Shown here: one piece after another, positions 2,822 to 58,850 of the stretch | Layout: each line of letters starts with the position of its first letter | How positions within the stretch are numbered: the stretch's first letter is position 1 | IMG/VR virus record: IMGVR_UViG_3300042887_005053 | Location: 1 to 64,000 of that record | Length of the DNA stretch: 64,000 nucleotides | Reading direction: 5' to 3' (one strand) | The notes under the pieces: model-generated | Database searches by the model: none | Seen by the model: only the letters and a program-made list of their open reading frames with translations | What the model was told of the DNA's origin: nothing | Position numbers and translations under genes: made by a program

Positions 2822-3376
2822 ATGAACGATCAAAAAATCTACAAGTATTTTGAATATCTCAAAGAGAATATACAAGATACACCAGAATCTTATGTTGAGT
2901 CTGCTTTGAGAAAGCTGCAAAATAGAATAACTAAAATGTTTTCTTATGATGAAGTTGAAGGTGGTGAAGTAAAAAAGTATGGAGAAGTATCTGATTTATC
3001 CAGAAAAGAAAAAGGTGAAATGAGTTTCAGAGACCTTAATTTGAAGTTAGAAAGTTTAGAGCTATCAAAATATTCAAAAGTTTTTGATAATTTGAAATTG
3101 AAATTCAGTGATGAACAGTTTTTGTATGATATGACATTCACAATAGATTTAAAAGACGCTGTGCCAACTGATCAAACAAAAGATTTTTCAGACAAAGATA
3201 TTGAGAATTGTCAGGTAAAATTTAAGAAATATTCAATAGATAACTTTAATTTAGAAGGCCAAATGATTAAAACTGTCAAAATTGCAGATATAAATGAAGA
3301 AACCATGATTAGTCTAAAAATTGAGTTGGATGAAGACACTGGTTCTGGTGGTGAAGAATTTGAAATCGAATATTAA
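2822..3376 (+). CDS. Hypothetical protein with CTS-like N-terminus (start revised from 2783)
   Basis: MNDQKIYKYFEYLKEN; late motif upstream. Confidence 0.7.
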   Translation: MNDQKIYKYFEYLKENIQDTPESYVESALRKLQNRITKMFSYDEVEGGEVKKYGEVSDLSRKEKGEMSFRDLNLKLESLELSKYSKVFDNLKLKFSDEQFLYDMTFTIDLKDAVPTDQTKDFSDKDIENCQVKFKKYSIDNFNLEGQMIKTVKIADINEETMISLKIELDEDTGSGGEEFEIEY

Positions 3377-3379
3377 TTT

Positions 3380-3652
3380 ATGAAATACTTAAAGAAGTTT
3401 AATGAAAATGTTGAAGGTTTAACAAAAGGCGAGATTCGGAAAATAGCAGATCGATTGTTGGACAAATTAGGCACTGCTATACACTTTTATTCTGTTTTAC
3501 CTGAGTCACAAGAAGAGTATAAAATCAAAATTGATAACTGTTTGAAAGAGATTAAAGACTCTGGCATTGATTTTGAAAAGGATGTTGTTAAATCAGTAAG
3601 AGACAGAAAAGATCATATATTTTCAATTTTAGTGAAACACAATTTGATTTAA
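3380..3652 (+). CDS. Hypothetical protein with CTS-like N-terminus
   Basis: MKYLKKFNEN. Confidence 0.7.
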   Translation: MKYLKKFNENVEGLTKGEIRKIADRLLDKLGTAIHFYSVLPESQEEYKIKIDNCLKEIKDSGIDFEKDVVKSVRDRKDHIFSILVKHNLI

Positions 3653-3681
3653 GAGAGAATATATTTCTCAATAAATAAGTT

Positions 3682-4191
3682 ATGCAGTATAACATAGTTA
3701 CTAATTATAAAGTAAATCAAATATTTAAATCAAAGAGTAGATACTTCAGAGTTAGTCTTGGATTATCTTCTACTCAAGAAAGTAATAGTGGAGATCGAGT
3801 CTTTTCTCAAAAAGATGATTTTGCTTTTTTTTACAATAGCCAATATCAAACTACAATTTTTGGACAAGGGAATATTGGTAATATTAAGTTCTACACTGAC
3901 CATTACATAAAAGAAGATAAAATAGCTTTTTATTTTGACAAAGAAGAGTTCATTTTCGACTTTGATGAAAAAATAGTTAATGAAAAAGGAGTAGACTTCT
4001 ACTTAGGTCACTTAATTAAAACTATTGAAACTCAATACGCTGATAGAATAAAAGAAAAAGAAGAAGTTAAAGAAGAACAAAAGAAAGAAGTTGGTGATGC
4101 AACTAAAGTATTTGAAAATCCTGGTAATGTAAAGTATGCTGATTTGAAAGCTTATTTAGATAAGGTAAGAACAGAAAGGCTAAAGACTTAA
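3682..4191 (+). CDS. Hypothetical protein
   Basis: 169-aa ORF in operon orientation. Confidence 0.7.
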   Translation: MQYNIVTNYKVNQIFKSKSRYFRVSLGLSSTQESNSGDRVFSQKDDFAFFYNSQYQTTIFGQGNIGNIKFYTDHYIKEDKIAFYFDKEEFIFDFDEKIVNEKGVDFYLGHLIKTIETQYADRIKEKEEVKEEQKKEVGDATKVFENPGNVKYADLKAYLDKVRTERLKT

Positions 4192-4421
4192 TTATAAAGT
4201 TGTATTGTTAATAGTTGCCAAATATACTTTTGATAAGTTTCATCTAAATCATCAAAGTCTATTTCATAATCTAAGCCACCTACAAATTGGTGTATGTAAA
4301 TTTTATTTCTTTTTCTAAATTCGATTGAGTTAATTACAAAAAATCCAAGATCGATTTCAAGTACTAACTCATTGAGACCGAGACTAACTATTTTGATTAC
4401 ATTTATTATCTCTTTCTTCAT
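4188..4421 (-). CDS. Hypothetical protein
   Basis: 77 aa; CAATATATA 5 nt upstream. Confidence 0.6.
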   Translation of the reverse strand: MKKEIINVIKIVSLGLNELVLEIDLGFFVINSIEFRKRNKIYIHQFVGGLDYEIDFDDLDETYQKYIWQLLTIQLYN

Positions 4422-4465
4422 AAAATTATATATTGAGTTAAAGAATAGAGAGATTATCGAAACAA

Positions 4466-4657: not shown

Positions 4658-4694
4658 TAATTAATATATATGATAAATTAAAATTAGTTTTTTT

Positions 4695-5954
4695 ATGATT
4701 TCAAAATATCAATCATTCAAATTAGATTCAATTTTAGAATCTTTATTACTTGAAAGTAAATTATATTTTTCAGATAGGCTTTTTTCTTTAATTAGTTCAC
4801 TTCCTTCAAATAAAGTAAAAGACTTATTAATAAATCTTCAGAAATCTGGTAAAGACTTAAATCTTAATCAGAATTACTTTGATTTTTCGGATTCTAAAGA
4901 AGAAGTTACTTTTATTCAAGATAGAAGAGCACAATCTATTTTAGGTGACCAACCAATGAAATTTAAAACTAATTCTAATGCTTCAAGTGCTTATCTTACT
5001 TTCAATAAGAAAAATGATGATACCTATACAAATCAATTAATTTTTGATGATTTGAATTTTGATCCAGAGACTTCGAGTAAACAAATACCAGGTTCAGATG
5101 TTGTCGGAGAAATAGTTGCTGAAACACCATCAAGAAAAACACCTGGTAAAATCTATATTTTATTTAAGTGGAAAAATGGTGATTCGGATGATTTTGTAGT
5201 ATTGAATAAAACAGCTGTTTCAAGTTATGACGATAGAATCGATAGAATTTGGCAATTGACTAAAAATCCAATTAGAATTGGAAGGGCTATTAGGTCTGTT
5301 ATCAATGCAGCTGGTGAAACAGTAACAGATGCTGAGATTGAACAATTTGTTAATGACTATAAGTCTGCTTGGGATATTATGAATGATGCATTTTCTAAGT
5401 TTGATATAGTTAACTCTGATAGTATTGCACATTGGTATTCTAATAATCAGTATGAAGGAGGTGGTCGATCTACTTTAGGAAATTCTTGTATGGCTGAGGT
5501 TGATTCAGATTTTTTTGATATCTATGTAGCTAATACTAGGGTTTGTAGTTTAGTTATTCTTTATGGTGATCAAGGTAAGGTAATTGATGGTAAATTCAAA
5601 GGTACTAAAATTAGAGGAAGAGCTTTACTTTGGAAAACTAATGAAGGTGATATGTTTATGGATAGAATCTATTACAATAACGAATCAGATGTTCAGTTAT
5701 TTAAGAGATTTGCTGAAAAGAATGGTTGGTGGTATAAAAGCTCTCAAGATTCAGATACAGATTTTCAAGCATCAAATGGTTCAAATGCTAAATATCCAAC
5801 TTACACAGTAACATTAGAAGAAGTACACTTTGATAATTATCCTTATGTTGATACAATGTGTTATTTAAATAAATCTACTAGAAAAATCAGTAACAATACA
5901 TCTGATATGAGAGAGGAAATGAGAAGTACCTCTGGATATCTTGACGAGATATAA
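4695..5954 (+). CDS. SCM/GRALLW/MDRIY-family protein, late paralog of 45586-46791
   Basis: LGNSCM, GRALLW, FMDRIY, YPYVDT; TTAATATATA at 4661-4670. Confidence 0.75.
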   Translation: MISKYQSFKLDSILESLLLESKLYFSDRLFSLISSLPSNKVKDLLINLQKSGKDLNLNQNYFDFSDSKEEVTFIQDRRAQSILGDQPMKFKTNSNASSAYLTFNKKNDDTYTNQLIFDDLNFDPETSSKQIPGSDVVGEIVAETPSRKTPGKIYILFKWKNGDSDDFVVLNKTAVSSYDDRIDRIWQLTKNPIRIGRAIRSVINAAGETVTDAEIEQFVNDYKSAWDIMNDAFSKFDIVNSDSIAHWYSNNQYEGGGRSTLGNSCMAEVDSDFFDIYVANTRVCSLVILYGDQGKVIDGKFKGTKIRGRALLWKTNEGDMFMDRIYYNNESDVQLFKRFAEKNGWWYKSSQDSDTDFQASNGSNAKYPTYTVTLEEVHFDNYPYVDTMCYLNKSTRKISNNTSDMREEMRSTSGYLDEI

Positions 5955-9132: not shown

Positions 9133-9377
9133 TGATAACTCAAGAAATTAATATAACACCTCAAGAACTATCAAATTACATTAACATTTGTGATGAGAAA
9201 AGAGTTTCGATTTATAACCAAAAATACACTAGAGCTGCACAACTAAGAGACTTTCAAAGAGAAATCACAAAAAAGTATCCTTCTTTAGAAGATTTTACTC
9301 TGGAATATTTAAAAAACGAACTTCTTCAAATACAAAGAACACAAAAAATAGATTCAATAATTAATGGCCAAGTTTGA
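9132..9377 (+). CDS. UVR-like helical hairpin protein with C-terminal tag
   Basis: SIYNQKYTRAAQLRDFQREI; ends QRTQKIDSIINGQV. Confidence 0.6.
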   Translation: MITQEINITPQELSNYINICDEKRVSIYNQKYTRAAQLRDFQREITKKYPSLEDFTLEYLKNELLQIQRTQKIDSIINGQV

Positions 9378-9720: not shown

Positions 9721-9727
9721 GTGTCTT

Positions 9728-11065
9728 TTAATCTACAGATTCTTCACTATCAATAAATACAAAATTACTATCATATTTACTTAAAAACTCTCTTGCTGTA
9801 TTCAATTTTGAAGTATTGTCTCTTATCCATTGTTTAGCCATTTCAAATGGTTCACATCTTAAAAGAGCTTTTTCGTAACTCTCTATACTTTTATAAGCAC
9901 TTAGTATTTCTTCTACACTCATCTTCTTTAATTCTTCTGCTTTAATCATATTCATAACAAATGAAAAATTAGAATTATTTTTAATATAACCTAAAGCATA
10001 ATCTTTTCTGGAAATATTAAGGTCTTTGAAGTGTTTATAAGCTTCATTTATTTCTTCAACTTTGTCGTTAATGGATTTTTTGACAATCTTTATTATCTTA
10101 TCGATCCTTTCGTGAGCTTCTTTTTCATCTTCTGGAATTTGTCCTAAGATATCATCAATTTTATCATCTAAAATATATCCAACTATAATATTCTCTCTAT
10201 GAATATCATCTGTTAATAAACCATGTCTTTCCATATACCATGGTGTTTTGATTTTAAAGAAAAAGTCTTTTCCAGATTTATCTTCAGCTTGAACAATAAC
10301 TCCTTCTTTGTCAACTTGTTTAGCAGTTAACTCAATCAAATTATCCAAATCCTTGAAATCATCTTCAAATGGTGCAATACGAATTGTTCCTATTTTATCT
10401 AAATAGTCTTTAATATCTAAATGTTTTCCAGTTTTGTTATCTCTCATTCTCAAAAGAATGAGGTCTTCTTCTAAGTATCTTAAAACGATTCTATTAGCTG
10501 GTGAAACATACTCAAAAATTGCAGTAATGTTATTATTTAAACACCAATCCACAAATTCTTTGATATCATTTCTTTCGCTATAGATTCTATTAATTCCATC
10601 TGCTTGATCATTATCAAATCCCATTTTAGATTTACCTAATACTTTACCGTTTGGTAACTTAATAAATGATGCTATACTACCATCTTCTTTGTTGTTAACA
10701 TATTTGATCTTATAATCTTTAACAATTGAATACATAGAGTCAGTTACTTGATTCAAGTTGAAGAACTTCTCAAGTAATAAAAATCTATTAAATAAAGATC
10801 CGTCTTTATTGAAAACAAAAGTCAATCCTCTCATCTCATAAGCTTTTACTTCTGGTTTGTTTTCTAAAGGTGAAGCAAAATCTTTATGTTGAGCAAGACG
10901 ATAATTGAATACAGAAATATTATATCCATCAATTACATACTTAGATTCATAGAAGGCAGAGTCTTCCTTAGAGCACATCTCAATGCAATCCTCATAAGTA
11001 GGAAGATAGTAAGATGTAATAGAATTAGATTCTTTTAAGTATTGGTTGAATGTGTAGATTTTCAT
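9728..11065 (-). CDS. T4 Rnl1-type RNA ligase with CTS-like N-terminus
   Basis: KFFN, KEDGS (motif I), FEYVSPANRIVLRY, EGVIV, FKIKTPWY; begins MKIYTFNQYLKES. Confidence 0.9.
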   Translation of the reverse strand: MKIYTFNQYLKESNSITSYYLPTYEDCIEMCSKEDSAFYESKYVIDGYNISVFNYRLAQHKDFASPLENKPEVKAYEMRGLTFVFNKDGSLFNRFLLLEKFFNLNQVTDSMYSIVKDYKIKYVNNKEDGSIASFIKLPNGKVLGKSKMGFDNDQADGINRIYSERNDIKEFVDWCLNNNITAIFEYVSPANRIVLRYLEEDLILLRMRDNKTGKHLDIKDYLDKIGTIRIAPFEDDFKDLDNLIELTAKQVDKEGVIVQAEDKSGKDFFFKIKTPWYMERHGLLTDDIHRENIIVGYILDDKIDDILGQIPEDEKEAHERIDKIIKIVKKSINDKVEEINEAYKHFKDLNISRKDYALGYIKNNSNFSFVMNMIKAEELKKMSVEEILSAYKSIESYEKALLRCEPFEMAKQWIRDNTSKLNTAREFLSKYDSNFVFIDSEESVD

Positions 11066-11808
11066 ATTTCTTTTTCAAAAATAGATATGTTAGAAGGACT
11101 AATATTATCTAAGGTATAATATCCTTCCTCATATCTTGGATCTTTAAATAATTTCAAGTTTGTGTTGTTGACTTTAAATATTATCCATTTTGTATTTTTA
11201 TTCCATTTTTTATTTCCTAACTCATAATGATTAATATCTCTTTCTTCTGAGTAATGTAGTTTCATTTGAGGTATTAAATTTTTACAGTCTTGTGCACTTT
11301 TACACAAATAAATTCTATCTATATGTGATGATAGTTTTGATTTGCTTTTTGGAAACAATCCCGATTTTAATATTTTTTTCTCATATTCTTGAATACTTAA
11401 ATGATAAAGTTCACCATCATATTTAGATTCTTCATCGAATTTTGAATCATACTCTATTGTTAGATTTGAAATAATTGATTTTTTTAATTTTATTTCTGAT
11501 TCATCATATTTTTTTAATCTGTTAAAACCATTTGACAATTCCAATAATTGAGAAGATGGAAACCACCCAAATTTGTTTGTCATTAAAGATGATAACATAT
11601 CAAATAAATCATCAATTTTTGAACTGTCTATTGATCTAAAGTTTAAAAATTTTATACTTATAATATCATCTTTTATCTGTCCTTCAACTTCAAATTTTAG
11701 TTTCTTTAATGTATCTAAAGTATATCTTAGTGACCTTTCGCCATCATTAGTTCGTATCAGACCTTCATTAATTGATTGTAAATAGTCTATGAAATTTTTT
11801 ATAAACAT
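11062..11808 (-). CDS. ADP-ribosyltransferase-fold protein resembling the NAD lobe of Tpt1/KptA
   Basis: LYHLS...ILKSGLFP...RIYL...IIFKV...GYYT.DNISP; begins MFIKNFIDYLQSINEG. Confidence 0.6.
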   Translation of the reverse strand: MFIKNFIDYLQSINEGLIRTNDGERSLRYTLDTLKKLKFEVEGQIKDDIISIKFLNFRSIDSSKIDDLFDMLSSLMTNKFGWFPSSQLLELSNGFNRLKKYDESEIKLKKSIISNLTIEYDSKFDEESKYDGELYHLSIQEYEKKILKSGLFPKSKSKLSSHIDRIYLCKSAQDCKNLIPQMKLHYSEERDINHYELGNKKWNKNTKWIIFKVNNTNLKLFKDPRYEEGYYTLDNISPSNISIFEKEI

Positions 11809-17084: not shown

Positions 17085-18599
17085 TTAGACTATTCTAATA
17101 TATTTCGGAGAAGTAAATTTATCATTGCTAATAGACATTGCATAATAAAATATACTTTGAATTATATCATTCGCATACATTGGATAATTATACAAAATCT
17201 CTGCAAAAAATAAAGACTGGTACTTTGAAATCATTCTTGATCTATTATAGAATGATTGTTTGTTACCAATAGATTGGCCGAGTTTTCCTATAATTCTATT
17301 TAGTCTTATAATCTCTCTTTTTAACTTTTCATCTGACCAATCTTCTAAGTCATTTTTAGTCAAAATTAAAGGAAGTGATTTTTCATTGATCTGTGCAATT
17401 TTTTCAATCACATGATTAATTCTAGTCAAACCAACCTTTCCGTGTCTAGCAGACTCACCAACTACTTCACCACTAACATCACTTATGGAATCAGGACCTG
17501 AAAATGATCGAATATCCATATATTCTGTTTTATTTTCACTTTCAATCTCACTTATTTGTTTTGCCATTACTCTGACACCAATAGAACCTAATGGATTTTT
17601 TTATGTAATTACTTTTTCAAATTCATATTTAGGAACTGGAGTTACCTTATTCAAAACTAATTTAACATCAGATGTTCTTTCAATTTGTTTTAATTTTTTC
17701 AGTGAAATCCCTCTTAGGATCTTTTGATCAAACAGTGAATCTATTAACTCATTGAACTCCTCAATAGTTTTAGTTTCACTAATTCTTGATAGAACTACAC
17801 TATGTTGTGTAGCCTGAACTGCCCAAATGTCAGATGGTGTCCACTTAGCAATTGGTATACCGGTTGTTTCAGGAAAACTTCTGTATTTATCATTAATTAT
17901 TTTGGTTAGTCCTTCTTTGTAGCCGATTTGGTAATAGATATAACTTTTACGTCTACTTAAAGCATTGTCATCTCTAGATTTATCTTTTGTGTAGATTGGT
18001 CTTATTTCAAATAAGGCATTTGCTGTATTTATAAACGACTTAATCCAAGTAACAGAATAATTTTCAATTATATCTCTGTTGATAACGATAGGTAGTCTGA
18101 CTTGTGAAAGTATTTCTGGCTTAATCTCACTTTCTTCATTAAAAAGTTCATCTAGTGATTCTTGTGTTAGACTTACATCACCTTTTGATTGTCTTAAAGA
18201 CAAAAATAAACATTGAATACATTCTACTAATCTAGTATCTGTGCTGCCAAGTGAACTACCGCCACTACTTCCGAATTCTGATGTTTTTTCAATATCATTT
18301 AATTGATAAGTTTGGCCGTTTGCGCCTTTTATTATCTTTTTATATCTAGGTCCGGATTTGAAAAAAGTCTTTGCTTTATCAGGATCATACTTACCATCAT
18401 CGGTTATATTTGGAACGATTTCATCTGGATTAACGACTTTAGTAAGTTTGTTTGAAACTGTGCCTCTAGGTTTGAATGTAAACTCATCTTCGTCATTCAT
18501 TTTACGAACTAAAACATCACCCCTAAGGTCACCAGACTTTGAGGTTTTTTCTAACTCTGATAAGTCAATATTGGCTTCGTAAAATTTTTTTATTTGCAT
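17085..18599 (-). pseudogene. PD-(D/E)xK-like protein of about 504 codons interrupted by one in-frame TAA at 17601-17603
   Basis: ORFs 17601-18599 and 17085-17567 share a frame, joined by 11 sense codons; KWTPSDIW...GISLKK. Confidence 0.6.
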
Positions 18600-29442: not shown

Positions 29443-29688
29443 ATGAACATTAAAAAATTTAATCAATTCTCATTAGTTATGGAATCTGAAACTATTAGTT
29501 TTCTCAAAGGCTTAAAAAAGCCCGAGATAAACAGTGATTTGAATGATCTTTTTAGAAGTAATGACTTCTTGGAAAGAAAAGAGTTAATTGAAGACATCCT
29601 ATTAGAAATAGGTGATATAGTAGATGATGAACAATATCACAAAATTGAAGATGAATTAAATTCAGAATTTTTACAAAAAAATAACTAA
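29443..29688 (+). CDS. Small late protein with CTS-like N-terminus
   Basis: MNIKKFNQFSLVMES; TTAATATATA 4 nt upstream. Confidence 0.7.
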   Translation: MNIKKFNQFSLVMESETISFLKGLKKPEINSDLNDLFRSNDFLERKELIEDILLEIGDIVDDEQYHKIEDELNSEFLQKNN

Positions 29689-33060: not shown

Positions 33061-34251
33061 TTATTTGAAATCTTTATATCTAATAACACTTTCGAACTGA
33101 CCACTCAATATTTTTTCTTGTTCATCTTGTCCTTGATGACAAAGACTTACAAAGTTATCTAATATTTTGTGTGAGTTCTCAACATCTTCTGGATGAAATA
33201 AAACGCCATATCTTTCATTCTTATCATCAGCTATAGCAGCAATCATATTATCAAGCTTACCAACTACTTTATATCCTGATGGACAAGATTCTGGATAATC
33301 ATTAAACGAGAAACTTAATTTCATATTTTTAATGTCTAACCCGTTGAATAACTTACAGTTTGAATATTCGGTTAGGGTTTTGTGATCTAAAGTTAATTTG
33401 TCATTTTCTAAAATTCTAACACCTGCATTCTTACACATTGATTGTAGACCAAAACAAATACCTAAAATTGGGTTCTTAGCGACTCTAATAGCTTGTTTAG
33501 ATAGTTTATCATCAAACTGATTAATTCTGTACTCTGAACCAGTCAAAATAGTTCCTACTACTTTTTTTGTTTCGAAAGCTTTGTTTAATTCAGTTATATC
33601 AGAAACAACAAGATGTTCGATTCCTCTGGTTCTACAATATTTCAGTAGATTTTTTAAGAATCGATTTTTTTGAGGTTCAGTGTTATTTACTATTAGTAAA
33701 ACTTGATTTTGGCTCAGTGGTGTTATTTTTGCACTTTCTACGACTTGATATGAATCAGGATACTTATCCATGAAAGTAAAGTCTTTTCTTGATAATTCAA
33801 AATTAGTATTGAAACTACTAAACACCTTAATCATTGCATCTAACGATTCATCTGATAATCCAAAATGTGTATCTTCATCTGATTTAGAACCAATTCCGTC
33901 ATAAAAGTGAACTTTAACGATATTTGGTGCTTCAATTGTGAATTCATAAATAACACGATCACCGTGAGTCATATCAACATTTAATTTAATCTCATTAGTT
34001 CTGGTATCAGTAATTACATGAATATCAAAAGTCATCAAATCTGGATCACCATCAGCTAAAACATCACCACCAGTCTCATCTGGTGTATTAACGAAATAAG
34101 TAACTCTTAAAATACTGTTTTCTCTTGTGATATCAGATAAAACATAGTCATGTGTACCATAACTAGTATATAGTTGTAAATTTTTAGGAAAGTGATCTCT
34201 AATATCATCTTTCATGTAATCTAAGTTTTCGTTAAATCTTTTAATTCTCAT
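33061..34251 (-). CDS. Unknown N-domain fused to class I glutamine amidotransferase domain
   Basis: ILTGS, LGICFGLQ, FHPE triad; begins MRIKRFNEN. Confidence 0.8.
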   Translation of the reverse strand: MRIKRFNENLDYMKDDIRDHFPKNLQLYTSYGTHDYVLSDITRENSILRVTYFVNTPDETGGDVLADGDPDLMTFDIHVITDTRTNEIKLNVDMTHGDRVIYEFTIEAPNIVKVHFYDGIGSKSDEDTHFGLSDESLDAMIKVFSSFNTNFELSRKDFTFMDKYPDSYQVVESAKITPLSQNQVLLIVNNTEPQKNRFLKNLLKYCRTRGIEHLVVSDITELNKAFETKKVVGTILTGSEYRINQFDDKLSKQAIRVAKNPILGICFGLQSMCKNAGVRILENDKLTLDHKTLTEYSNCKLFNGLDIKNMKLSFSFNDYPESCPSGYKVVGKLDNMIAAIADDKNERYGVLFHPEDVENSHKILDNFVSLCHQGQDEQEKILSGQFESVIRYKDFK

Positions 34252-34252: not shown

Positions 34253-35056
34253 TTAATACTCAATTCTTTCTACATTCTTTAGTTTCACATCATAATACTC
34301 ATTATCATATTGAACTGTTATGTTGTCAAATTCGTCAATACTAACTGGTTTTAGTGGTTCTTTTGGATCATTATCTGGTAAATCTTCAACAACTGTTGCA
34401 TAAATAATTCCATTATCATCTATACACTTGATTATATCTTCTTGTGTTATGTTATTCACTTTGAAATCTTCAAATAACATAATATATTTAAGTGATGCTT
34501 TCTCAACGATTTTGTGTCTATTTTTAATATTATCAAGTAAAGACTCGATTTCTCTAACAATTTTATTGTGTGTATTGGTTAGTCTACGATTTGATTTCAA
34601 GTTAGTGATGATGAAATTAGTTTCGATATAATATCTACTTCTAAATCCAGCTGAAGCGGCGTACATATCTGATATATTTTGAAGTCTATCACAAAGTTTA
34701 ATAGTTAAGGCATCATCACTCATATAAGTCATTTTGTTGAGTAAATAATTTGCTTTTCCTTGTTTAGTTATTTCACTTTCATCTGATGTTAGTTCTTGTA
34801 CAAGTTTTGCTACTCTACCACCAAACTTAGATTTTATTAGGTCAAATGTCACAAAGTCAACATCTTCTAAAGTATCGTGAAGAATTGCAGCTGTTCCTAA
34901 GGTTGCTCTAGTATCGAATCTTTTGAGAATACTAAATACCTTAACAACATGACCTTCGAAGTATGTAGTTGATGTGAATCTTCTTCTCATACCTTTGTGA
35001 GCATCTTTTGAGAACTTCCAAGCTTTCTGTTCTAAAGGTGTTAAAGTTATTGGCAT
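34253..35056 (-). CDS. RelA/SpoT-type HD hydrolase (small alarmone hydrolase, Mesh1-like) plus C-terminal domain
   Basis: AHKGMRR, H, AAILHDTLED, ELT, IKLCDRLQN; no synthetase domain. Confidence 0.85.
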   Translation of the reverse strand: MPITLTPLEQKAWKFSKDAHKGMRRRFTSTTYFEGHVVKVFSILKRFDTRATLGTAAILHDTLEDVDFVTFDLIKSKFGGRVAKLVQELTSDESEITKQGKANYLLNKMTYMSDDALTIKLCDRLQNISDMYAASAGFRSRYYIETNFIITNLKSNRRLTNTHNKIVREIESLLDNIKNRHKIVEKASLKYIMLFEDFKVNNITQEDIIKCIDDNGIIYATVVEDLPDNDPKEPLKPVSIDEFDNITVQYDNEYYDVKLKNVERIEY

Positions 35057-35165: not shown

Positions 35166-36344
35166 ATGAAAATTAAAGATTATCAAGGTTTTCTTGAAGA
35201 GTTAAGTAATAAAGATATGTATGAAATTATTCCTAATTCAGTTAAAGAATTGAATAACATTTTCAAAAAATCTGGAAAGAAACTTTATGTAGTTGGTGGT
35301 GCAGTCCGTGATTTTCTAACAGGAGAAAAACCAAAAGACTTTGATCTTGCTACAGACGCACTTCCAGATGAAGTGCTAGAAATTCTTGGTCACAAATATA
35401 GAACTAACTTACAGGGTAAGGCTTTTGGTGTGGTAGTTGTTTATACTGAAGATGAACCAGCAGGAATGGAAATTGCAACTTTTAGATCAGATGTTACAAA
35501 AGGTAGAAATCCAGAAGTTAAATTAGGAGTTACAATAGAAGATGATGTCAAAAGAAGAGATCTAACTTATAACTCACTTTTTTATGACTTAGATAAAAAA
35601 GAAATTGTAGATTTAGTTGGTGGTGTTAAAGACTTAGAAGATAAAATAACTAGAATGGTTGGAGATCCGTTGGAAAGAATTGAAGAAGATTCTTTGAGGA
35701 TTTTAAGAGCATTCCGTTTTTCTGCTAGATACGGAACACCTTTGGATGAATCTTTAATTGAATCTATAAAAAAGAGAAAGCAGTTACAGAATGTCGATCC
35801 GGAATCTGGTGAAATGAAAAGAATTTCACAAGAAAGAATTTGGGAAGAAATGAAAAAAGCTTACTATCAAGCTAAGTCTTATGTTCACTACTTGGAATTT
35901 TTTAATTACTTTGACATGTGGGAAGAAGTTTTCCCAGGAGCTATTATTAATAGAGATATTGTAGAATGTCATGAACTTGTTACTTATATAGCTAACTTAT
36001 TCAAATTTGATAATAAGTCAGATTTAGAAAGCAGATTAGTAATAAACTATAAAATTGAAAGTGATATTGCTTCAAAAGTTGTTTTCTTGATAAATCTACT
36101 TGATCTAAGAACTGACAATGCTTTTGACTTATATAAACAAAAAACAAGGTCTAACTGTCAAACATCTACCATAATTGATTGGTTAGATGCTAATAACATT
36201 CATAGAAAAATATTTATAAGATTTATTGATTATGCTCCGAGTGTTTCTGCTGAAGAATTAATGAGTCAAGGCTTCAAAGGTAAAGAACTTGGTCAAAAGA
36301 TTAAAGATTTAGAGATTAAAAAATTCAAAGATTTATTAAGATGA
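35166..36344 (+). CDS. cca: Class II tRNA nucleotidyltransferase (CCA-adding enzyme family)
   Basis: VGGAVRD, DFDLAT, RRDLTYN, EDSLRILRAFRF, ISQERI; begins MKIKDYQGFLEE. Confidence 0.85.
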   Translation: MKIKDYQGFLEELSNKDMYEIIPNSVKELNNIFKKSGKKLYVVGGAVRDFLTGEKPKDFDLATDALPDEVLEILGHKYRTNLQGKAFGVVVVYTEDEPAGMEIATFRSDVTKGRNPEVKLGVTIEDDVKRRDLTYNSLFYDLDKKEIVDLVGGVKDLEDKITRMVGDPLERIEEDSLRILRAFRFSARYGTPLDESLIESIKKRKQLQNVDPESGEMKRISQERIWEEMKKAYYQAKSYVHYLEFFNYFDMWEEVFPGAIINRDIVECHELVTYIANLFKFDNKSDLESRLVINYKIESDIASKVVFLINLLDLRTDNAFDLYKQKTRSNCQTSTIIDWLDANNIHRKIFIRFIDYAPSVSAEELMSQGFKGKELGQKIKDLEIKKFKDLLR

Positions 36345-36601
36345 AAAAATTCACAGAGTCAGTAGACGACTCCGGTACAAGAGATATTGATGGAACTTGG
36401 CTACCAGAAACGCCACATGCTAAGCTTAGAAACAAGTTAGGTACTTTTTGGACTTTATCTCAGTTGATTTCGGATAAACAAAGATTTCAAACACTTATTT
36501 CATCTGATACTGGAAAAGATTTGATTGTTGATACTGCTAATCAGTGTGAGTTGAACAAAGAAAGTATTTTAGAACTAATCAAAATAATCGAAGAATTATG
36601 A
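36341..36601 (+). CDS. Small protein with CTS-like N-terminus
   Basis: MKKFTES; ATGA overlap with cca. Confidence 0.65.
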   Translation: MKKFTESVDDSGTRDIDGTWLPETPHAKLRNKLGTFWTLSQLISDKQRFQTLISSDTGKDLIVDTANQCELNKESILELIKIIEEL

Positions 36602-43176: not shown

Positions 43177-43395
43177 ATGAAATTCAAACCAGGTGATTTA
43201 GTTATTAAAAATACCGGTGGTAATAAGATGAGAATCTTATCACTTGAGAATAACCAAATACAGTGTGGATGGTTCACAGAGAGTTACCACGAGTCTATAT
43301 TTGACGAAAAAGAACTCTTACCATATAGTCAGTATGAAAAGGTCAGAATTACTGCTAAAAGAGACGATTTAATCAACCAAATACTTTTCAAATAA
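43177..43395 (+). CDS. YodC/DUF2158-like protein with C-terminal tag
   Basis: FKPGDLV...GGNKM...CGWF; ends KRDDLINQILFK. Confidence 0.75.
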   Translation: MKFKPGDLVIKNTGGNKMRILSLENNQIQCGWFTESYHESIFDEKELLPYSQYEKVRITAKRDDLINQILFK

Positions 43396-52275: not shown

Positions 52276-52290
52276 GTTTCTATATATTAT

Positions 52291-53070: not shown

Positions 53071-54122
53071 TATTGATTTAGTATTTTTTGAATCTCGGCA
53101 ACTTTGTCTTTGTTTTTATCATCTTGAATAAATTCGGCGAATTTTACAACTTGTCCCATTTTACCTTCATCCTGCTTTATTTTTCCAAGAACTTCTTTTG
53201 CCTTTGCTGCATTTTCACCAGGCTCTTCAGCAGGTCCTATTATTTCAGCATAACTCTTTTTAATAGTTGGTTTTCCATCTTTATCTAAAAGCACCACACT
53301 ATCTGGTCTATCTTGATCGTTCAACGAATCAATTGTCTTAACACCAACTATATTTGCTTGATCTTCTGGTTTTTTCTTAGGGTCATAATCAGACTTCTCT
53401 TTGTCTTTTAACAAGTAAATTACAGGTGTTTTTTTATCAAAAAGCTCCTTTAATTTATCATAGTTCATTGAGTCATCTTTTTGACCACTTTTCTTCTTTG
53501 CTTCATCAAATGCCTTTTTTACTTCTTCTTCTGTGAAATTCTTGTCAACATCAATTTGTAAAGACTTTTGTAGATCATCAAAGAATTTATTAGCAACTGC
53601 TTTCTTTGCCTTTAGATCTTTTGCCTTATTAACTTGATCAATATAGTTTTTCTTTGAAAATTTGTAGTTAATATCCTTTTTAAGTATACCTCTTTGTGGG
53701 TCTAAAACACCTACTAGTCCTACCCAATCAGCTGCTTTATTTCCCAGTAATAAAGCTTTAGCTATTTCTTTGATTGCAGCAGATTTATCTTTACCAAATG
53801 CTGATTCAACGTCTTTTCCGATATTTTCAGCAAGTTGTACTAGAGTGTTAATCATATTATCCATAACTCCAATAACTGAAGTTTCATCTTGAAGATTATT
53901 AACTTCTTTTTGTGCAGCATCAATAGCTTGATTGATATTAGACATCAAAACATCTTTTATCGAGTCTGGATCGTCTTCCTTGAACATTTTTTTGAAGTCA
54001 TTGACTAAATCTTTGAATGGTGCAGAAAAAACACCAGCTAATTTTCCTAAAGCGCCTTTAATTATACCACCTATGAATTCTTCGTTAATTTGTTGGTATT
54101 CTTTAAATTTTTGTACATCCAT
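53070..54122 (-). CDS. Helical Lys/Asp-rich late protein with CTS-like N-terminus
   Basis: MDVQKFKEYQQINEE; TAATATATA at 54143-54151. Confidence 0.7.
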   Translation of the reverse strand: MDVQKFKEYQQINEEFIGGIIKGALGKLAGVFSAPFKDLVNDFKKMFKEDDPDSIKDVLMSNINQAIDAAQKEVNNLQDETSVIGVMDNMINTLVQLAENIGKDVESAFGKDKSAAIKEIAKALLLGNKAADWVGLVGVLDPQRGILKKDINYKFSKKNYIDQVNKAKDLKAKKAVANKFFDDLQKSLQIDVDKNFTEEEVKKAFDEAKKKSGQKDDSMNYDKLKELFDKKTPVIYLLKDKEKSDYDPKKKPEDQANIVGVKTIDSLNDQDRPDSVVLLDKDGKPTIKKSYAEIIGPAEEPGENAAKAKEVLGKIKQDEGKMGQVVKFAEFIQDDKNKDKVAEIQKILNQ

Positions 54123-54218
54123 CTTGAAAAATATATTTAATCTATATATTATTTATTGTGGATCAATATTCAAAACAAAAAAGAGAAGTATCAATATAAT
54201 AATTAAAATATTTTTTTT

Positions 54219-55157: not shown

Positions 55158-55415
55158 ATGAAGAATCTGTCAAATAAAGAGAAAAACAGAAGAAAGTTTC
55201 AAAAGATGTACAAATCACTTGAAAATAAACTTCATGATTCTAATTTAATTTGGTGGAATTCATTATCAATGAAAGCAAGATATTCTTTCTTATTTAAATG
55301 GATTTCTGCTAAGAGTAATATGAAGTTCAAGCATTTTCTTAAAGAGAATCAGTTTAGATATCAACCAAGTATTTCCAACTTTAGAGAAGCATCAATCGAA
55401 CATTTATTAAAATAA
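55158..55415 (+). CDS. Basic early protein with C-terminal tag (start revised)
   Basis: TATATTTG 4 nt upstream; ends FREASIEHLLK. Confidence 0.65.
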   Translation: MKNLSNKEKNRRKFQKMYKSLENKLHDSNLIWWNSLSMKARYSFLFKWISAKSNMKFKHFLKENQFRYQPSISNFREASIEHLLK

Positions 55416-55416
55416 T

Positions 55417-56370
55417 ATGAATATAAAAATTTTTTCTGGTTCCAATTATAAAGATTTAGGTAAGCAAATCAGTGAACATTTAGGTATCGAAATGGGTAGT
55501 CTGAGAATTGATAAATTCAAAGACGGTGAGATACTACCTTGTTTTTTAGAATCAATCAGAGATTTAGACATATTCTTTGTTAACAGTACGGACTCTTCTG
55601 AGTCTATTATGGAGACTCTTTTAGTAACTGATGCCGCAAAAAGAGCTGGTTGTAAATCATTTACCTTGGTCTCACCGTATTCTGGTTATTCAAGGCAGGA
55701 CAAAACAGATCATTTGAGATCTTCAATTGGAAGTAAGCTTTTAGCCGATATACTTGAAAAAGCCGGTGTCTCAAGATTAATAACTATAGACTTACACGCT
55801 AGTGCAATTCAAGGATTTTATAACATACCAGTGATTCACTTAAATGGAAACAAGGTATCGAGTAACTATATTAAATCTCTTAATTTAGATAATCTCTGTA
55901 TAGTTGCACCAGATCAAGGTGCTGTCAAAAGAGCTTCTGATTTTTGCAAAGCTTTTCCAGAGTCTTCTTTTGCTATGATTAATAAAAGAAGGCTTAAACC
56001 AAATGAAATTCATTCAATGGAGCTTGTTGGAGATGTTACTAATAAGAATGTAATAATTGTAGATGATATGGCTGATACTTTAGGTACTATGGTAAAAGCA
56101 TCAGACTTACTTTTATCTAAAGGTGCTACATCTGTAAGATGTGTAGCGACTCACGGAATATTGAGTGGTGAAGCACTAAATAATCTTGAAAACTCACAGA
56201 TAACAGAGTTAGTTGTTTCTGATACTATTAACTCAACTCTTGATAAAGAAGTAGCAATGAGTAATTCTATACACAGAATTAAAGTAATAAGTTGTTCATA
56301 TCTATTAGCTAAATCAATTTCGGCTCTTTATCAAAAGAGGAGTATTCACGAAATAAATGTAATTGAATAA
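55417..56370 (+). CDS. prs: Ribose-phosphate pyrophosphokinase
   Basis: FKDGE, YSRQDK, DLHASAIQGFY, APDQG, VDDMADT. Confidence 0.93.
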   Translation: MNIKIFSGSNYKDLGKQISEHLGIEMGSLRIDKFKDGEILPCFLESIRDLDIFFVNSTDSSESIMETLLVTDAAKRAGCKSFTLVSPYSGYSRQDKTDHLRSSIGSKLLADILEKAGVSRLITIDLHASAIQGFYNIPVIHLNGNKVSSNYIKSLNLDNLCIVAPDQGAVKRASDFCKAFPESSFAMINKRRLKPNEIHSMELVGDVTNKNVIIVDDMADTLGTMVKASDLLLSKGATSVRCVATHGILSGEALNNLENSQITELVVSDTINSTLDKEVAMSNSIHRIKVISCSYLLAKSISALYQKRSIHEINVIE

Positions 56371-56419
56371 TTAAACTTATTATTATAATCAGATATAAAA
56401 TAAAAAATAAATTTTTTTA

Positions 56420-57580
56420 ATGAGCAAACCTTATAAATTAGCACTTTCTCAGATCGTGAAGAACGAAGCACACGTTGTAGAAAGAATGTTAAACACGATT
56501 AAACCCATTATTGATTGTGTTGTTGTAGTTGATACTGGTTCAACTGACGGAACACAAGATGTAATTCGTAAATGGGGAGAAACAAACAATATTGCATGTT
56601 TTGTTTATGATAGACCATTCGATAATTTTGAGAATTCAAGAAATTATGCAATGGAAATGGTAAAAGATAAGTCTGAATATGCTTTTTGGCTTGATGCAGA
56701 TGAAATGCTTGAAATTGACCCTAAGGTTTTTGATAAAAACAAGTTAGACAAAGATCTTTATATGTTCAACACATTCATTGGAAGTATGAAATATACTCGT
56801 AATGAGTGTTGGAAAACTGATAAACCTTTTAGATGGTATGGACCTGTTCATGAATTTATTGTTTGTGATCAACAAAATATCACATCTGGTCTTATGGAAG
56901 GTCTATCTGTAAAAGTATTTATGGATGGTGGTTCTTGGAAAGGAAATATCGCTGATAAATACAAAAAACATTCGGCTATTTTAGAAGATTATATTGACAA
57001 CAAAGACAGAAATGCTCGTTGGGTATTCTATACAGCTCAATCATATCACGATTCTGCTTCACTTCCAGATAATAAAGTTGAAAATGAAGAGAGACTTAGA
57101 AGAGCTTTGAAATACTATAGAGAAAGAGTAGGTCGAAGTGATGGTTATGAAGAAGAAAGATTCTACTCACAGTTTCGTGTTGGAACTATTATGAGAGTAT
57201 TAGAAGAACCTTGGGCTTTAACACATCAAGAGTTGTTAAAAGCTTATACAATGGATCCACTTAGAGCTGAGCCAATTAAAGCTATTGTTGACTATTACTT
57301 GTCAGTAGGTGAATGGAATATGGCATTCTTATACACTAAGTTTGCTAAAGCTAACTTCCATGGTAAAAATCCATATCCTACTAGACTTCTATTTGTTGAT
57401 GAAAGTCTTTACATCTGGAGATTCTTAGAAGTACACGCAGCAGCTTGTTTCTATACTAATAGAAAAGAAGAAGCATCTGCTAACTACAGAGAATTACAAG
57501 ATGTGATCAGAAGAGCACCACAATACTTCACACAAGAAGATATTGCAAAAATCAATTCGAACGCTCAGTTCTTTAAGTAA
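56420..57580 (+). CDS. GT2 glycosyltransferase with TPR-like C-terminus
   Basis: IVKNE, DTGSTDGT, LDADE, GPVHE, FYTAQSY. Confidence 0.88.
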   Translation: MSKPYKLALSQIVKNEAHVVERMLNTIKPIIDCVVVVDTGSTDGTQDVIRKWGETNNIACFVYDRPFDNFENSRNYAMEMVKDKSEYAFWLDADEMLEIDPKVFDKNKLDKDLYMFNTFIGSMKYTRNECWKTDKPFRWYGPVHEFIVCDQQNITSGLMEGLSVKVFMDGGSWKGNIADKYKKHSAILEDYIDNKDRNARWVFYTAQSYHDSASLPDNKVENEERLRRALKYYRERVGRSDGYEEERFYSQFRVGTIMRVLEEPWALTHQELLKAYTMDPLRAEPIKAIVDYYLSVGEWNMAFLYTKFAKANFHGKNPYPTRLLFVDESLYIWRFLEVHAAACFYTNRKEEASANYRELQDVIRRAPQYFTQEDIAKINSNAQFFK

Positions 57581-57612
57581 AAAAAGAGAGATTAATTTCT
57601 CTCTTTTTTTTT
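57579..57612 (+). terminator. Intrinsic terminator
   Basis: AAAAAAGAGAGA...TCTCTCTTTTTT. Confidence 0.75.
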
Positions 57613-57615
57613 ATT

Positions 57616-58173
57616 ATGAAATCAAAACTAATAACTATTATAGGTTCTCCAGCTAGTGGAAAATCCACTCTTGCGTCTGATGTTCATACAGAACTCAAGA
57701 AGTTAGGAAAGAACTCTATTTTCATAACAGAAGCCGCTACAGACTATATTGCTGAGTTTGGTATACCAAACACTCCTGTAGATCAACTTGTAATTTTCTA
57801 TAAACAACTTAATAGAGAAAGAATGTATATAGATTCAAAAGATTACATTGTTTGTGATTCTTCTGGTATACTTAACTACTTCTACTTTAGAACATTATTT
57901 GAGAACAAATTATCTAATAAAGACATAGCAGTAATCAATCACCTACAAAAAGAAATTCTTAAAACGATAAATCAGTGGTCTCATATTTTCTATGTACCAG
58001 CAATGATTGAAAACACTGAAGATAATATCAGATATCATGACAAAGAAGATATTATTAAAATAGACAGGTGGATTAAGTCTTATTTAGAGTTAGAAAATAT
58101 TAATCATACAGATTTATCTAAAATAGATTTGCAAAAGAGGAAAGACTTTATAATTAAAGAGATATTAAAATAA
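57616..58173 (+). CDS. P-loop kinase (NadR/AAA_28-like)
   Basis: GSPASGKST, ITEAA, IVCDS. Confidence 0.75.
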   Translation: MKSKLITIIGSPASGKSTLASDVHTELKKLGKNSIFITEAATDYIAEFGIPNTPVDQLVIFYKQLNRERMYIDSKDYIVCDSSGILNYFYFRTLFENKLSNKDIAVINHLQKEILKTINQWSHIFYVPAMIENTEDNIRYHDKEDIIKIDRWIKSYLELENINHTDLSKIDLQKRKDFIIKEILK

Positions 58174-58201
58174 AAAAGAGACTTTTAAGTCTCTTTTTTT
58201 T
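58172..58201. terminator. Bidirectional intrinsic terminator
   Basis: AAAAAAGAGACTT-TT-AAGTCTCTTTTTT. Confidence 0.85.
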
Positions 58202-58850
58202 ATTTACTTAATAATTTTATCAAGTCTTCAGTAATGATGGAAATCATTTTTCTTCCATCTACTTCAACTAAAGGTATATCTTTCACCCAAGAATACTTAT
58301 CATTACCATCGATTGAAATTCCTTCAATCATTTTTACGATTTTTTCATTGTCTGAGTATTTTGAACAGTAATATTCTTTTAAATCTGTAACAAATTTAAC
58401 TAAGTCAACGCCCTTTTTATAGTTATACTTAACCATTTGAAGTTCGTTGTCTTGTCTTTCAACCATGATGTACCAAATTGATGACTTAGAAACTTTTACA
58501 TTTTCTAAGAAGTTAAACCCTTTAGATGCTTTGACTCCTTTTGGTAGTTTTGCAACTTTACCATAGAATTTAACATCTTCATTTTTAGCTTTATCTGATG
58601 ATTCGTCTTCTTCAGAATCAACTGTTTGGCCACTTGGCATCATGTAATTAGTTGACATAAACTGTTCACCTTTTGACTTCTTATAAGGAAGATTTGGAAC
58701 AGCAGGTCTATCACCTTCAGTTTCAGGTAATGCCGAAGAGTGTGGATCTTCTTGAACTTCTTGTTTTTTAGATCCAGATAATTCAGAGAATTTTTTAAAA
58801 GATGAAATCTTAGTTGATTCTTTTCCTGTTTCTTCGTTCTTTTTAATCAT
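58200..58850 (-). CDS. Late hypothetical protein
   Basis: KISSFKKFSE near the N-terminus; TTAATATATA at 58878-58887. Confidence 0.7.
   Translation of the reverse strand: MIKKNEETGKESTKISSFKKFSELSGSKKQEVQEDPHSSALPETEGDRPAVPNLPYKKSKGEQFMSTNYMMPSGQTVDSEEDESSDKAKNEDVKFYGKVAKLPKGVKASKGFNFLENVKVSKSSIWYIMVERQDNELQMVKYNYKKGVDLVKFVTDLKEYYCSKYSDNEKIVKMIEGISIDGNDKYSWVKDIPLVEVDGRKMISIITEDLIKLLSK

What the first reader, a model, noticed from the sequence alone, without database searches (positions are those of the whole stretch)
2822..58850. T4 capsid-targeting-like N-terminal signal on late enzymes: a predicted injected cargo set
Seen: MNDQKIYKYFEYLKE (2822), MKYLKKFNE (3380), MISKYQSF...ILE (4695), MKIYTFNQYLKE (RNA ligase), MFIKNFIDYLQSINE (ART-fold), MQIKKFYE (nuclease), MNIKKFNQF..VME (29443), MRIKRFNE (amidotransferase), MKIKDYQGFLEE (CCA enzyme), MKKFTE (36341) and MDVQKFKEYQQINE (54122). 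Non-terminal copies are LKYIMLFEDF (HD hydrolase) and KISSFKKFSE (58850). Every carrier lies downstream of the ATATATA late motif. Established: T4 internal proteins carry the CTS MKTYQEFIAE, are cut after Glu by prohead protease gp21 and are injected with the DNA. Inference: these enzymes are packaged and delivered at the moment of infection. This set is essentially disjoint from the C-terminal-tag set (44053, MKNYKDY, is ambiguous), suggesting two protein address codes tied to expression time.
Basis: partly seen in the sequence, partly recalled or inferred. Interest (0 to 1): 0.87.

Follow-up and report, generated by a model that had tools for sequence, protein, structure and literature searches.

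The report
N-terminal cargo tag of huge phages
About one protein in ten of this huge uncultured phage and its relatives, including a tRNA-repair enzyme set, starts with the same short peptide, and it looks like the tag phage T4 uses to load proteins into its head for injection; loading itself has not been shown.

Summary
The window is the first 64 kb of a megaphage contig. Its clade includes the complete 635-kb genome LR745206.

**What was found**
- A 9-15-residue N-terminal leader sits on many unrelated proteins. The long form is MK[ILV]xK[YF]x[EQD]F[IL]xE[SN]; the short form is MK[YH][LI]Kx[FY]NES.
- It is 13-50 times commoner at N-termini than inside proteins.
- It is conserved in orthologues at the amino-acid level, not the codon level.
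- It is missing from RNA ligase 1 homologues of T4 and of sister clades.
- In LR745206 about 124 of 945 ORFs carry it.

**Support for capsid targeting**
- The clade has a T4-type head module: gp20-like portal, gp21-like protease fused to a scaffold, and gp23-type capsid protein.
- The leader ends in hydrophobic-x-Glu, the T4 protease site type.
- Its core ranks T4 ipIII and ipII first and second of 124 T4 ORFs.
- Carriers favour the AATATATA motif found upstream of head genes and avoid host-type promoters.

**Against**
- No virion proteomics exists, because no member is cultured.
- Fixed-register comparisons with the T4 tag failed.
- No phage is known to load this many different proteins into its head.

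Verdict: a T4-like capsid-targeting tag is the best explanation (about 0.5). Injection is inferred.

The parts
2822..2866 (+). Diverged leader (MNDQKIYKYFEYLKE) of a 184-aa protein, gene 2822-3376
   Evidence: Orthologues start MK[IV].K[FY].[DE]FI[NK]E. AATATATA lies at 2810-2817.
3380..3406 (+). Short-form leader MKYLKKFNE of a 90-aa protein, gene 3380-3652
   Evidence: Scores 22.6 bits with the short matrix, which was trained on LR745206 only.
4695..4739 (+). Diverged leader of a 419-aa protein, gene 4695-5954
   Evidence: Orthologues start M.[VL]LKY.D[FY]I[ST]EK. AATATATA lies at 4663-4670.
11030..11065 (-). Leader MKIYTFNQYLKE of RNA ligase 1, gene 9728-11065
   Evidence: Pfam RNA_lig_T4_1. 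About 18 extra residues compared with T4 Rnl1. Conserved in at least 10 orthologues with synonymous codon changes. M1 and E12 are the only invariant leader residues. A TAnnTTTG motif lies at -18.
11764..11808 (-). Leader MFIKNFIDYLQSINE of a Tpt1/KptA-like RNA 2'-phosphotransferase, gene 11062-11808
   Evidence: AlphaFold2 pLDDT 84; residues 1-20 score 62-64 and the core starts at residue 23. The top 18 Foldseek matches are all Tpt1/KptA. The N-terminus is conserved in 40 homologues.
18576..18599 (-). Leader MQIKKFYE of a 332-aa protein (phrog_1462, function unknown), gene 17601-18599
   Evidence: AATATATA lies at 18604-18611.
29443..29484 (+). Leader MNIKKFNQFSLVME of an 81-aa protein, gene 29443-29688
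   Evidence: Scores 9.6 bits and was not in the training set. AATATATA lies at 29431-29438.
34228..34251 (-). Weak short-form leader MRIKRFNE of a 396-aa protein with a C-terminal class-I GATase domain, gene 33061-34251
   Evidence: The Pfam GATase match starts at residue 198. The leader scores 3.5 bits. No orthologue was found in the loci held.
35166..35201 (+). Leader MKIKDYQGFLEE of the CCA-adding enzyme, gene 35166-36344
   Evidence: Pfam PolyA_pol. 11-18 extra residues compared with solved CCA enzymes. Orthologues start M[KI][IL]KKY..FLES. A TAnnTTTG motif lies at -12 and a TATATA-type motif at -32.
54081..54122 (-). Leader MDVQKFKEYQQINE of a 350-aa protein, gene 53070-54122
   Evidence: Orthologues start MK[IV].KY.E[FY] and continue to NEEF. 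AATATATA lies at 54143-54150.
34463..34492 (-). Relic leader LKYIMLFEDF inside the HD ORF 34253-35056. It marks the start of an 84-aa leader-bearing gene that is separate in relatives.
   Evidence: Relatives start MK[WR]IKLFEDF. In the window the start codon reads CTT. The HD_4 domain covers residues 12-149 only.
58782..58811 (-). Internal leader-like segment KISSFKKFSE (residues 14-23) of a 216-aa protein, gene 58200-58850
   Evidence: Conserved at the same internal position in two orthologues. Scores 8.2 bits.
36341..36358 (+). MKKFTE, claimed as a carrier but not supported
   Evidence: Scores with neither matrix. No orthologue was found in the loci held.
52281..52288 (-). AATATATA late-type promoter motif upstream of a 1570-aa collagen-like, beta-propeller structural protein (47563-52275)
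   Evidence: The same motif lies upstream of the capsid protein, portal and protease genes in relatives.

Best explanation
The leader is most likely a capsid-targeting propeptide of the T4 kind, used on a much larger scale by a clade of huge phages with T4-type heads.

Proposed mechanism:
1. Late genes encode proteins that start with a 9-15-residue amphipathic helix. Its pattern is aromatic, then aromatic three residues on, then Ile/Leu, then Glu two further on.
2. The helix binds the scaffolding core while the prohead forms.
3. The gp21-family prohead protease, fused to the scaffold in this clade, removes the leader after the conserved Glu.
4. The mature protein stays in the head with the DNA and enters the cell at infection.

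In this window the cargo would include a tRNA-repair set: RNA ligase 1, a Tpt1-like 2'-phosphotransferase and the CCA-adding enzyme. Repair enzymes delivered ready-made could act even if a host anticodon nuclease had already stopped translation.

Shown here:
- The tag exists, is confined to N-termini and is selected at the protein level.
- It was added to enzymes whose outside homologues lack it.
- It goes with the promoter motif of the head genes.
- T4-type head genes are present in the clade.

Inferred only: binding to the scaffold, cleavage after Glu, packaging and injection.
For: 1. The tag is real.
- It is enriched 13-50 fold at N-termini.
- The order of residues matters, not only composition.
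- It is conserved in orthologues of at least six unrelated families.
- Synonymous codon use at conserved positions equals that of gene bodies. For Ser after the Glu the test gives p = 0.23, and for the two Lys positions p = 0.47 and 1.0.

2. It is an addition. T4 Rnl1, the LR756504 and LR756501 Rnl1 homologues and solved CCA enzymes all lack it.

3. The clade has a T4-type head module in LR745206.
- The portal matches T4 gp20 at 5e-23.
- The capsid protein matches Pfam Gp23 at 1.8e-26.
- A 707-aa protein just upstream of the capsid gene matches phrog_207 'head maturation protease' at 4e-30. It also matches Pfam Peptidase_S77 weakly.
- Behind the protease domain lie about ten 14-residue repeats, each with an [IL]-A-E site.

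4. The end of the leader looks like a protease site.
- 293 of 294 distinct leaders have a Glu within residues 8-18.
- The residue two before that Glu is hydrophobic or aromatic in 83%, against 48% in other proteins. Ser is the commonest residue after it.
- E12 is invariant in the Rnl1 leaders.
- The capsid protein has a nearly invariant SINE-N site, and several leaders end in INE.

5. The leader core resembles the T4 tag. A 7-column matrix from leader positions 6-12 ranks T4 ipIII 1st, ipII 2nd, ipI 5th, inh 8th, gp24 11th and gp22 12th of 124 T4 ORFs. In each internal protein the core starts at residue 4. This matches the T4 positions mapped by experiment: 4 and 7 for targeting, 8 and 10 for processing (PMC9026906).

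6. Timing fits.
- [AT]TATATA lies within 45 nt upstream of the capsid gene in 49 of 56 orthologues, the protease in 55 of 55 and the portal in 45 of 51.
- Leader genes have TATATA within 16 nt of the start codon in 34% of cases, against 11% of other genes (odds ratio 4.2, p = 5e-10).
- They almost never have the host-type TAnnTTTG motif: 2 of 124 against 73 of 821.

7. Capacity is plausible. Phage SPN3US packs more than 40 MDa of ejection proteins (PMC7411985).
Against: - There is no proteomic or experimental evidence, and no cultured relative carries the tag. It is absent from 45 kb of Tenacibaculum phage PTm1, 42 kb of Lak-B5 and 70 kb of T4.
- Full-length fixed-register matrices do not recognise the T4 internal proteins. 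The core test that does was chosen after those two failures.
- The leader matrix hits the scaffold repeats: 10 of the 106 best internal windows, including the second best of 171,390. The reverse test fails. A matrix built from the repeats finds no leader.
- About 13% of ORFs carry the tag. That is far more than any known packaged set. Part of this count comes from a matrix trained on the same genome.
- Some carriers, such as a GATase and an NFACT-R protein, have no obvious reason to be injected.
- In the window, Rnl1 and CCA sit behind host-type promoter motifs.
- The head module was seen in relatives, not in the window itself.
Confidence: 0.5

Rival explanations
1. The leader is a tag on late proteins with another destination or partner. 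Candidates are an assembly site, the phage's own Hsp70 (window 6089-7972), or self-association through an amphipathic helix. No packaging would be involved.
For: - The tag marks about 13% of ORFs, more than seems needed for cargo.
- A second, mutually exclusive C-terminal tag marks another 14% and goes with early promoters. This hints at a general sorting or turnover scheme.
- The phage encodes a full Hsp70.
- The reverse test for resemblance to the scaffold repeats failed.
Against: - It does not explain the conserved hydrophobic-x-Glu end with an invariant Glu.
- It does not explain why the leader core picks out the T4 internal proteins.
- No compartment genes or partner proteins were identified.
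Confidence: 0.25
2. The proteins are targeted to the prohead and cleaved, but most are core or scaffold-like proteins that are degraded and expelled. Alternatively, only a minority is retained and injected.
For: - Many carriers are small, acidic ORFans. Asp is enriched 1.7 fold in residues 15-30.
- Some sit right beside the capsid gene.
- T4 gp67, gp68 and gp22 are cut into fragments in the same way (PMC5694885).
Against: Enzymes with intact catalytic domains (Rnl1, CCA, Tpt1-like) carry the same leader. Loading them only to destroy them would serve no purpose.
Confidence: 0.12
3. The leader is a nascent-peptide or early-elongation 'ramp' that boosts translation of late messages with little or no 5' untranslated region.
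For: - Leader genes are enriched for a promoter motif only 10-11 nt upstream of the start codon. That implies very short 5' untranslated regions.
- Lys is over-represented about twofold at residues 2-5 across all N-termini.
Against: - Two thirds of leader genes lack the nearby promoter, and two thirds of genes with it lack the leader.
- Conservation extends to residues 9-13, with an invariant Glu.
- Codon use at the conserved positions is neutral.
- It does not explain the T4 core match.
Confidence: 0.1
4. The motif is a by-product of AT-rich composition or of one large paralogous family.
For: - The genome is 29% G+C and rich in K, I, N, F and Y.
- Look-alikes that are native to their families exist in the window: the methyltransferase MINKIFNEECL and the PRPP synthetase MNIKIFSGS.
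Against: - Shuffles that keep composition give about 16 times fewer hits at 6 bits and about 100 times fewer at 10 bits.
- The carriers belong to unrelated families with different folds.
- Homologues outside the clade lack the leader.
Confidence: 0.03

Closest known systems
[quoted passage not shown]
   Same: - It is a short propeptide at the very N-terminus of otherwise unrelated proteins.
- It has the same spacing: aromatic, aromatic three residues on, Ile/Leu, then Glu.
- It ends in a hydrophobic-x-Glu site.
- The phage has gp20-, gp21- and gp23-type head genes.
- The body after the tag is highly variable.
   Different: - The core starts at residue 6, or 7 in the short form, instead of residue 4.
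- Residues 2-5 (K, Y/H/I, L/I, K) have no counterpart in T4, and full-length matrices do not cross-match.
- About 100 carriers per genome stand against a handful in T4.
- Carriers include RNA-repair enzymes.
- The protease is fused to the scaffold.
- Function has not been tested.
Propeptides of ejection and inner-body proteins of giant phages phiKZ, 201phi2-1 and SPN3US
   Same: - Many different head-internal proteins are processed after Glu by a gp21-related protease and delivered to the host.
- The cargo mass is large (PMC7411985, PMC5694885).
   Different: - Those propeptides are mostly longer than 100 residues (PMC5694885).
- From my own knowledge rather than a source read here, their cleavage motif is S/A/G-x-E, and they do not share one common N-terminal sequence.
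- Here a single short shared leader is used.
Encapsulin cargo-loading peptides
   Same: A short conserved peptide appended to unrelated enzymes directs them into an HK97-fold shell.
   Different: From general knowledge, those peptides are usually C-terminal, bind the shell protein directly and are not cleaved, and the compartment is not a virion.

Membership tests
T4-type capsid targeting sequence | Short (10-20 residue) propeptide at the extreme N-terminus of unrelated proteins | tested here: met
   N-terminal enrichment of 13-50 fold over internal windows; at least 17 unrelated families carry it.
T4-type capsid targeting sequence | Sequence resembles the T4 CTS at the residues mapped by experiment (4 and 7 for targeting, 8 and 10 for processing; PMC9026906) | tested here: inconclusive
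   Fixed-register matrices fail, ranking the T4 internal proteins 8th to 110th of 124. A 7-column core with free register ranks ipIII, ipII and ipI 1st, 2nd and 5th, but it was chosen after those failures.
T4-type capsid targeting sequence | Ends in a gp21-type cleavage site (Leu/Ile-x-Glu) | tested here: met
   By sequence only. A Glu lies within residues 8-18 in 293 of 294 leaders. The residue two before it is hydrophobic or aromatic in 83%, against 48% in other proteins. E12 is invariant in Rnl1 leaders.
T4-type capsid targeting sequence | The phage encodes a gp21-family prohead protease, a scaffolding core and a gp23-type capsid protein | tested here: met
   Met in LR745206 and 80 related loci. 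The head module does not lie in the window itself.
T4-type capsid targeting sequence | Carriers are made when proheads assemble (late) | tested here: met
   Inferred from promoters only. Carriers are associated with the motif found upstream of head genes and depleted in the host-type motif. The window alone is marginal (p = 0.066).
T4-type capsid targeting sequence | Carriers are present in virions with the propeptide removed, and are ejected into the host | not testable with these tools
   No cultured member of the clade (PMC9723777) and no proteomic data.
Giant-phage (phiKZ/SPN3US) ejection-protein propeptides | Long propeptides (mostly over 100 residues) without a shared leader sequence | tested here: not met
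   The leader is 9-15 residues long and shared between carriers.
Tpt1/KptA RNA 2'-phosphotransferase (for the 'ART-fold' carrier 11062-11808) | Tpt1 fold; catalytic Arg-His-Arg-Arg tetrad | tested here: inconclusive
   Fold: the top 18 Foldseek matches are all Tpt1/KptA (E 6e-5 to 4e-3, target TM-score about 0.4). No Pfam or PDB sequence match. Catalytic residues were not mapped; invariant H136, H162 and R165 are noted.

The most novel reading that the evidence does not exclude
A megaphage clade sorts its proteome with two terminal tags.
- About 100 late proteins (roughly 13% of ORFs) carry the N-terminal leader. They would be loaded into the prohead, trimmed by the prohead protease and co-injected. 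This first-minute toolkit would include a complete tRNA-repair set able to defeat anticodon-nuclease defences before any phage translation.
- A separate C-terminal tag, R[DE]xK[IL]xx[IL]L, marks about 14% of ORFs, mostly with early-type promoters. Its fate would be different, for example timed turnover.
Probability: 0.3. Interest if true: 0.9.

Novelty: new variant of a known kind. Interest (0 to 1): 0.7.

Why it matters
- If the tag works as proposed, the likely virion cargo of uncultured megaphages could be read directly from sequence.
- The number of different proteins known to be delivered by any phage would rise several fold.
- It suggests that RNA-repair enzymes are delivered ready-made as a counter-defence.
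- It would supply a short portable peptide for loading foreign proteins into very large capsids.
- It turns two open questions into testable ones: what the hundreds of ORFans in huge phages do, and how large capsids choose their protein content.

Tried and rejected
- **Near-DNA search of phage records:** no match.
- **Fixed-register leader matrices against T4:** the internal proteins do not score.
- **Matrix built from the scaffold repeats:** it does not retrieve leaders. The idea that the leader mimics a scaffold repeat therefore stays a lead only, despite the one-way hits.
- **AlphaFold2 of Rnl1 with 8 sequences:** too poor to use (pLDDT 50). It shows only a helix at residues 2-13 and a coil at 14-23.
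- **Cultured relatives with virion data:** the nearest by capsid protein is PTm1 at 29% identity. It has the same portal, protease-scaffold and capsid gene order but no leader in the 45 kb checked. Lak-B5 has none either.
- **Cellulophaga phage homologues of the 4695 family:** they match only the C-terminal half and are annotated as hypothetical proteins.
- **Literature search for the motif strings:** nothing found.
- **Sequence searches for the 'nuclease' and 'ART' labels:** nothing beyond phrog_1462, a family of unknown function.
- **RNA-level element as the explanation:** rejected by the codon-use test.
- **Walking along the source contig to reach its own head module:** judged too costly after one step.

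Full report
**Source**

The window is 29% G+C. It is positions 1-64000 of the 204-kb contig IMGVR_UViG_3300042887_005053. The same phage also occurs on a 411-kb ENA contig.

Its RNA ligase 1 is 62-63% identical to those of the complete uncultured megaphages LR745206 (635 kb) and LR756502 (642 kb). No megaphage had been cultured as of 2021 (PMC9723777).

In the window, Phe or Tyr occupies residue 6 in 20 of 90 ORFs, against a background of 9.9%.

Orthologues in 27 related loci keep the leader in six unrelated families:

| Family | Leader in orthologues |
|---|---|
| Rnl1 | MK[IL]F.Y.EF[IL].ES |
| CCA enzyme | M[KI][IL]KKY..FLES |
| 2822 family | MK[IV].K[FY].[DE]FI[NK]E |
| 4695 family | M.[VL]LKY.D[FY]I[ST]EK |
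| 53070 family | MK[IV].KY.E[FY], continuing to NEEF |
| 17601 family | leader kept, more variable |

Tests against chance:
- A matrix trained on these six families finds 11 further families. It hits 4.1% of held-out N-termini against 0.32% of internal windows.
- In LR745206, fetched in 13 pieces, 72 of 945 ORFs start M[KR][YHFW][ILV][KRT]. This is the short form, typically MKYLKxFNES or MKHLKxYKIFES.
- With both matrices, 124 of 945 ORFs are positive. The short matrix was trained on that same genome.
- In 80 further loci around the capsid gene, 8.2% of N-termini reach 10 bits against 0.17% of internal windows.
- Shuffling residues 2-14 within each protein removes the signal.
- Orthologues of the NFACT-R gene next to the capsid gene carry either form. 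The two forms are therefore versions of one element.

**Selection acts on the protein**

Codon use at the conserved Ser, Lys and Leu positions matches codon use in gene bodies.

**The leader is an addition**
- T4 Rnl1 aligns from window residue 24.
- The Rnl1 homologues of the sister megaphages LR756504 and LR756501 start directly at the conserved IP[ST]Y motif.
- Solved CCA enzymes lack the first 11-18 residues.
- In the AlphaFold2 model of the 248-aa carrier, residues 1-20 form a lower-confidence helix and coil ahead of a confident core.

**What the carriers are**

In the window:
- RNA ligase 1, the CCA-adding enzyme and a GATase-domain protein.
- A Tpt1/KptA-like RNA 2'-phosphotransferase.
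- Several ORFans.

In LR745206:
- A 2H-phosphoesterase (Acb1-like) joined to an RNase T exonuclease.
- A GH108 lysin.
- An NFACT-R protein.
- Most of the larger carriers have no Pfam match.

The annotated carriers lean towards tRNA and RNA repair.

**Head module**

LR745206 encodes the following:
- A portal that matches T4 gp20 (5e-23).
- A Gp23-family capsid protein (1.8e-26).
- A 707-aa protein between them. Its first 265 residues match phrog_207 'head maturation protease' (4e-30) and, weakly, Pfam Peptidase_S77.

After a conserved LNES site, the 707-aa protein continues into about ten tandem 14-residue repeats (NIAYSEY[IL]AENLDK). Each repeat has an [IL]-A-E site. An acidic stretch and a conserved C-terminal domain follow.

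The capsid protein has a nearly invariant EFHSINE-NAY segment. Several leaders also end in INE.

The same repeats occur in LR756504 and LR756501 but not in PTm1.

**Relation to the T4 tag**

Full-length matrices in fixed register do not recognise T4 ipI-III.

A 7-column core from leader positions 6-12, with consensus Y-x-E-F-[LI]-x-E, was then scanned freely over the first residues. It ranks these proteins among 124 T4 ORFs:
- ipIII and ipII 1st and 2nd, and ipI 5th.
- The head protein inh 8th, gp24 11th and gp22 12th.

In the internal proteins the core starts at residue 4. The aligned residues are those that experiments map as T4 targeting (4 and 7) and processing (8 and 10) positions (PMC9026906). 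This test was chosen after the two failures, so it carries less weight.

The leader matrix also hits the scaffold repeats: 10 of the 106 best internal windows, including the second best of 171,390. The reverse matrix finds no leader, so I treat this resemblance as a lead only.

**Timing**

Two promoter-like motifs lie close to start codons. One is the Bacteroidota host-type TAnnTTTG. The other is AATATATA, found either 10-11 nt or about 26-37 nt upstream of the start codon.

- The AATATATA core ([AT]TATATA) is conserved upstream of the capsid gene (49 of 56 orthologues), the protease-scaffold gene (55 of 55) and the portal gene (45 of 51).
- Leader genes are enriched for it (odds ratio 4.2, p = 5e-10).
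- They are depleted in the host-type motif (odds ratio 0.17).
- In the window the association is weaker, and Rnl1 and CCA carry the host-type motif. Most of their orthologues carry AATATATA instead.

**Second tag**

- It overlaps the leader set once (odds ratio 0.04, p = 5e-8).
- It is enriched behind host-type promoters.
- It is depleted behind the nearby TATATA motif.

**Conclusion**

The evidence fits a T4-style capsid-targeting and processing tag used on an unprecedented scale. Every functional step (binding, cleavage, packaging, ejection) remains inferred. I put this explanation at about 0.5. The main rival is a late-protein tag with another purpose.

**Limits**
- Genes were called by a simple rule: longest ORF, first ATG.
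- The head module was seen in relatives, not in the window.
- The sister clades and outgroups were sampled only in 40-70-kb pieces.

Noticed in passing
LR745206 as a whole (L029-L041); window examples are the C-termini of ORFs 19784-20077(-), 42649-42927(+), 43177-43395(+) and 55158-55415(+): A C-terminal motif, R[DE]xK[IL]xx[IL]L, ends 133 of 945 ORFs. It is almost never found together with the N-terminal leader. It is enriched behind host-type TAnnTTTG promoters and depleted behind the nearby TATATA motif. Its function is unknown.
   Followed up: partly
window 9728-11808(-) and 34253-36344: An RNA-repair set: RNA ligase 1, a Tpt1/KptA-like 2'-phosphotransferase, an HD_4 hydrolase and the CCA-adding enzyme. 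Three of the four carry the leader. LR745206 adds a leader-bearing protein that joins a 2H-phosphoesterase (Acb1-like) to an RNase T exonuclease.
   Followed up: partly
L033:2546-4669 (LR745206 198546-200669) and orthologues in L044-L123: The prohead protease is fused to the scaffold. The scaffold part has about ten tandem 14-residue repeats (NIAYSEY[IL]AENLDK), each with an [IL]-A-E site. An 83-aa ORF at LR745206 460435-460686 contains similar repeat units.
   Followed up: partly
window-wide, for example 1806-2717(-), 35166 and 45586 against 2822, 17601-18599(-) and 29443: Both promoter-like motifs often end only 4-15 nt before the start codon. This suggests messages with little or no 5' untranslated region.
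   Followed up: partly
window 34253-35056(-): The HD hydrolase ORF runs without a stop into an 84-aa gene that is separate in relatives. That gene's start codon reads CTT here.
   Followed up: yes
L011:about 9137-11257: In one relative the Rnl1 reading frame continues upstream for 288 codons without a stop. That stretch looks like a GIY-YIG-type endonuclease, and the leader is replaced.
   Followed up: no
window 6089-7972(+), 55417-56370(+), 61715-62254(-), 62286-63998(-): The phage encodes a full Hsp70, a PRPP synthetase, a guanylate kinase and the large subunit of carbamoyl-phosphate synthase. The small subunit lies just beyond the window.
   Followed up: no
window 47563-52275(-): A 1570-aa protein has collagen repeats, cysteine-rich modules and a beta-propeller, and sits behind the AATATATA motif. 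It is probably a fibre or adhesin.
   Followed up: no
T4 record, L043:13952-14410(-) and L042:11327-12007(-): With the megaphage core matrix, T4 gene 57B (next to ipI) ranks 3rd and the head protein inh ranks 8th of 124 ORFs.
   Followed up: no
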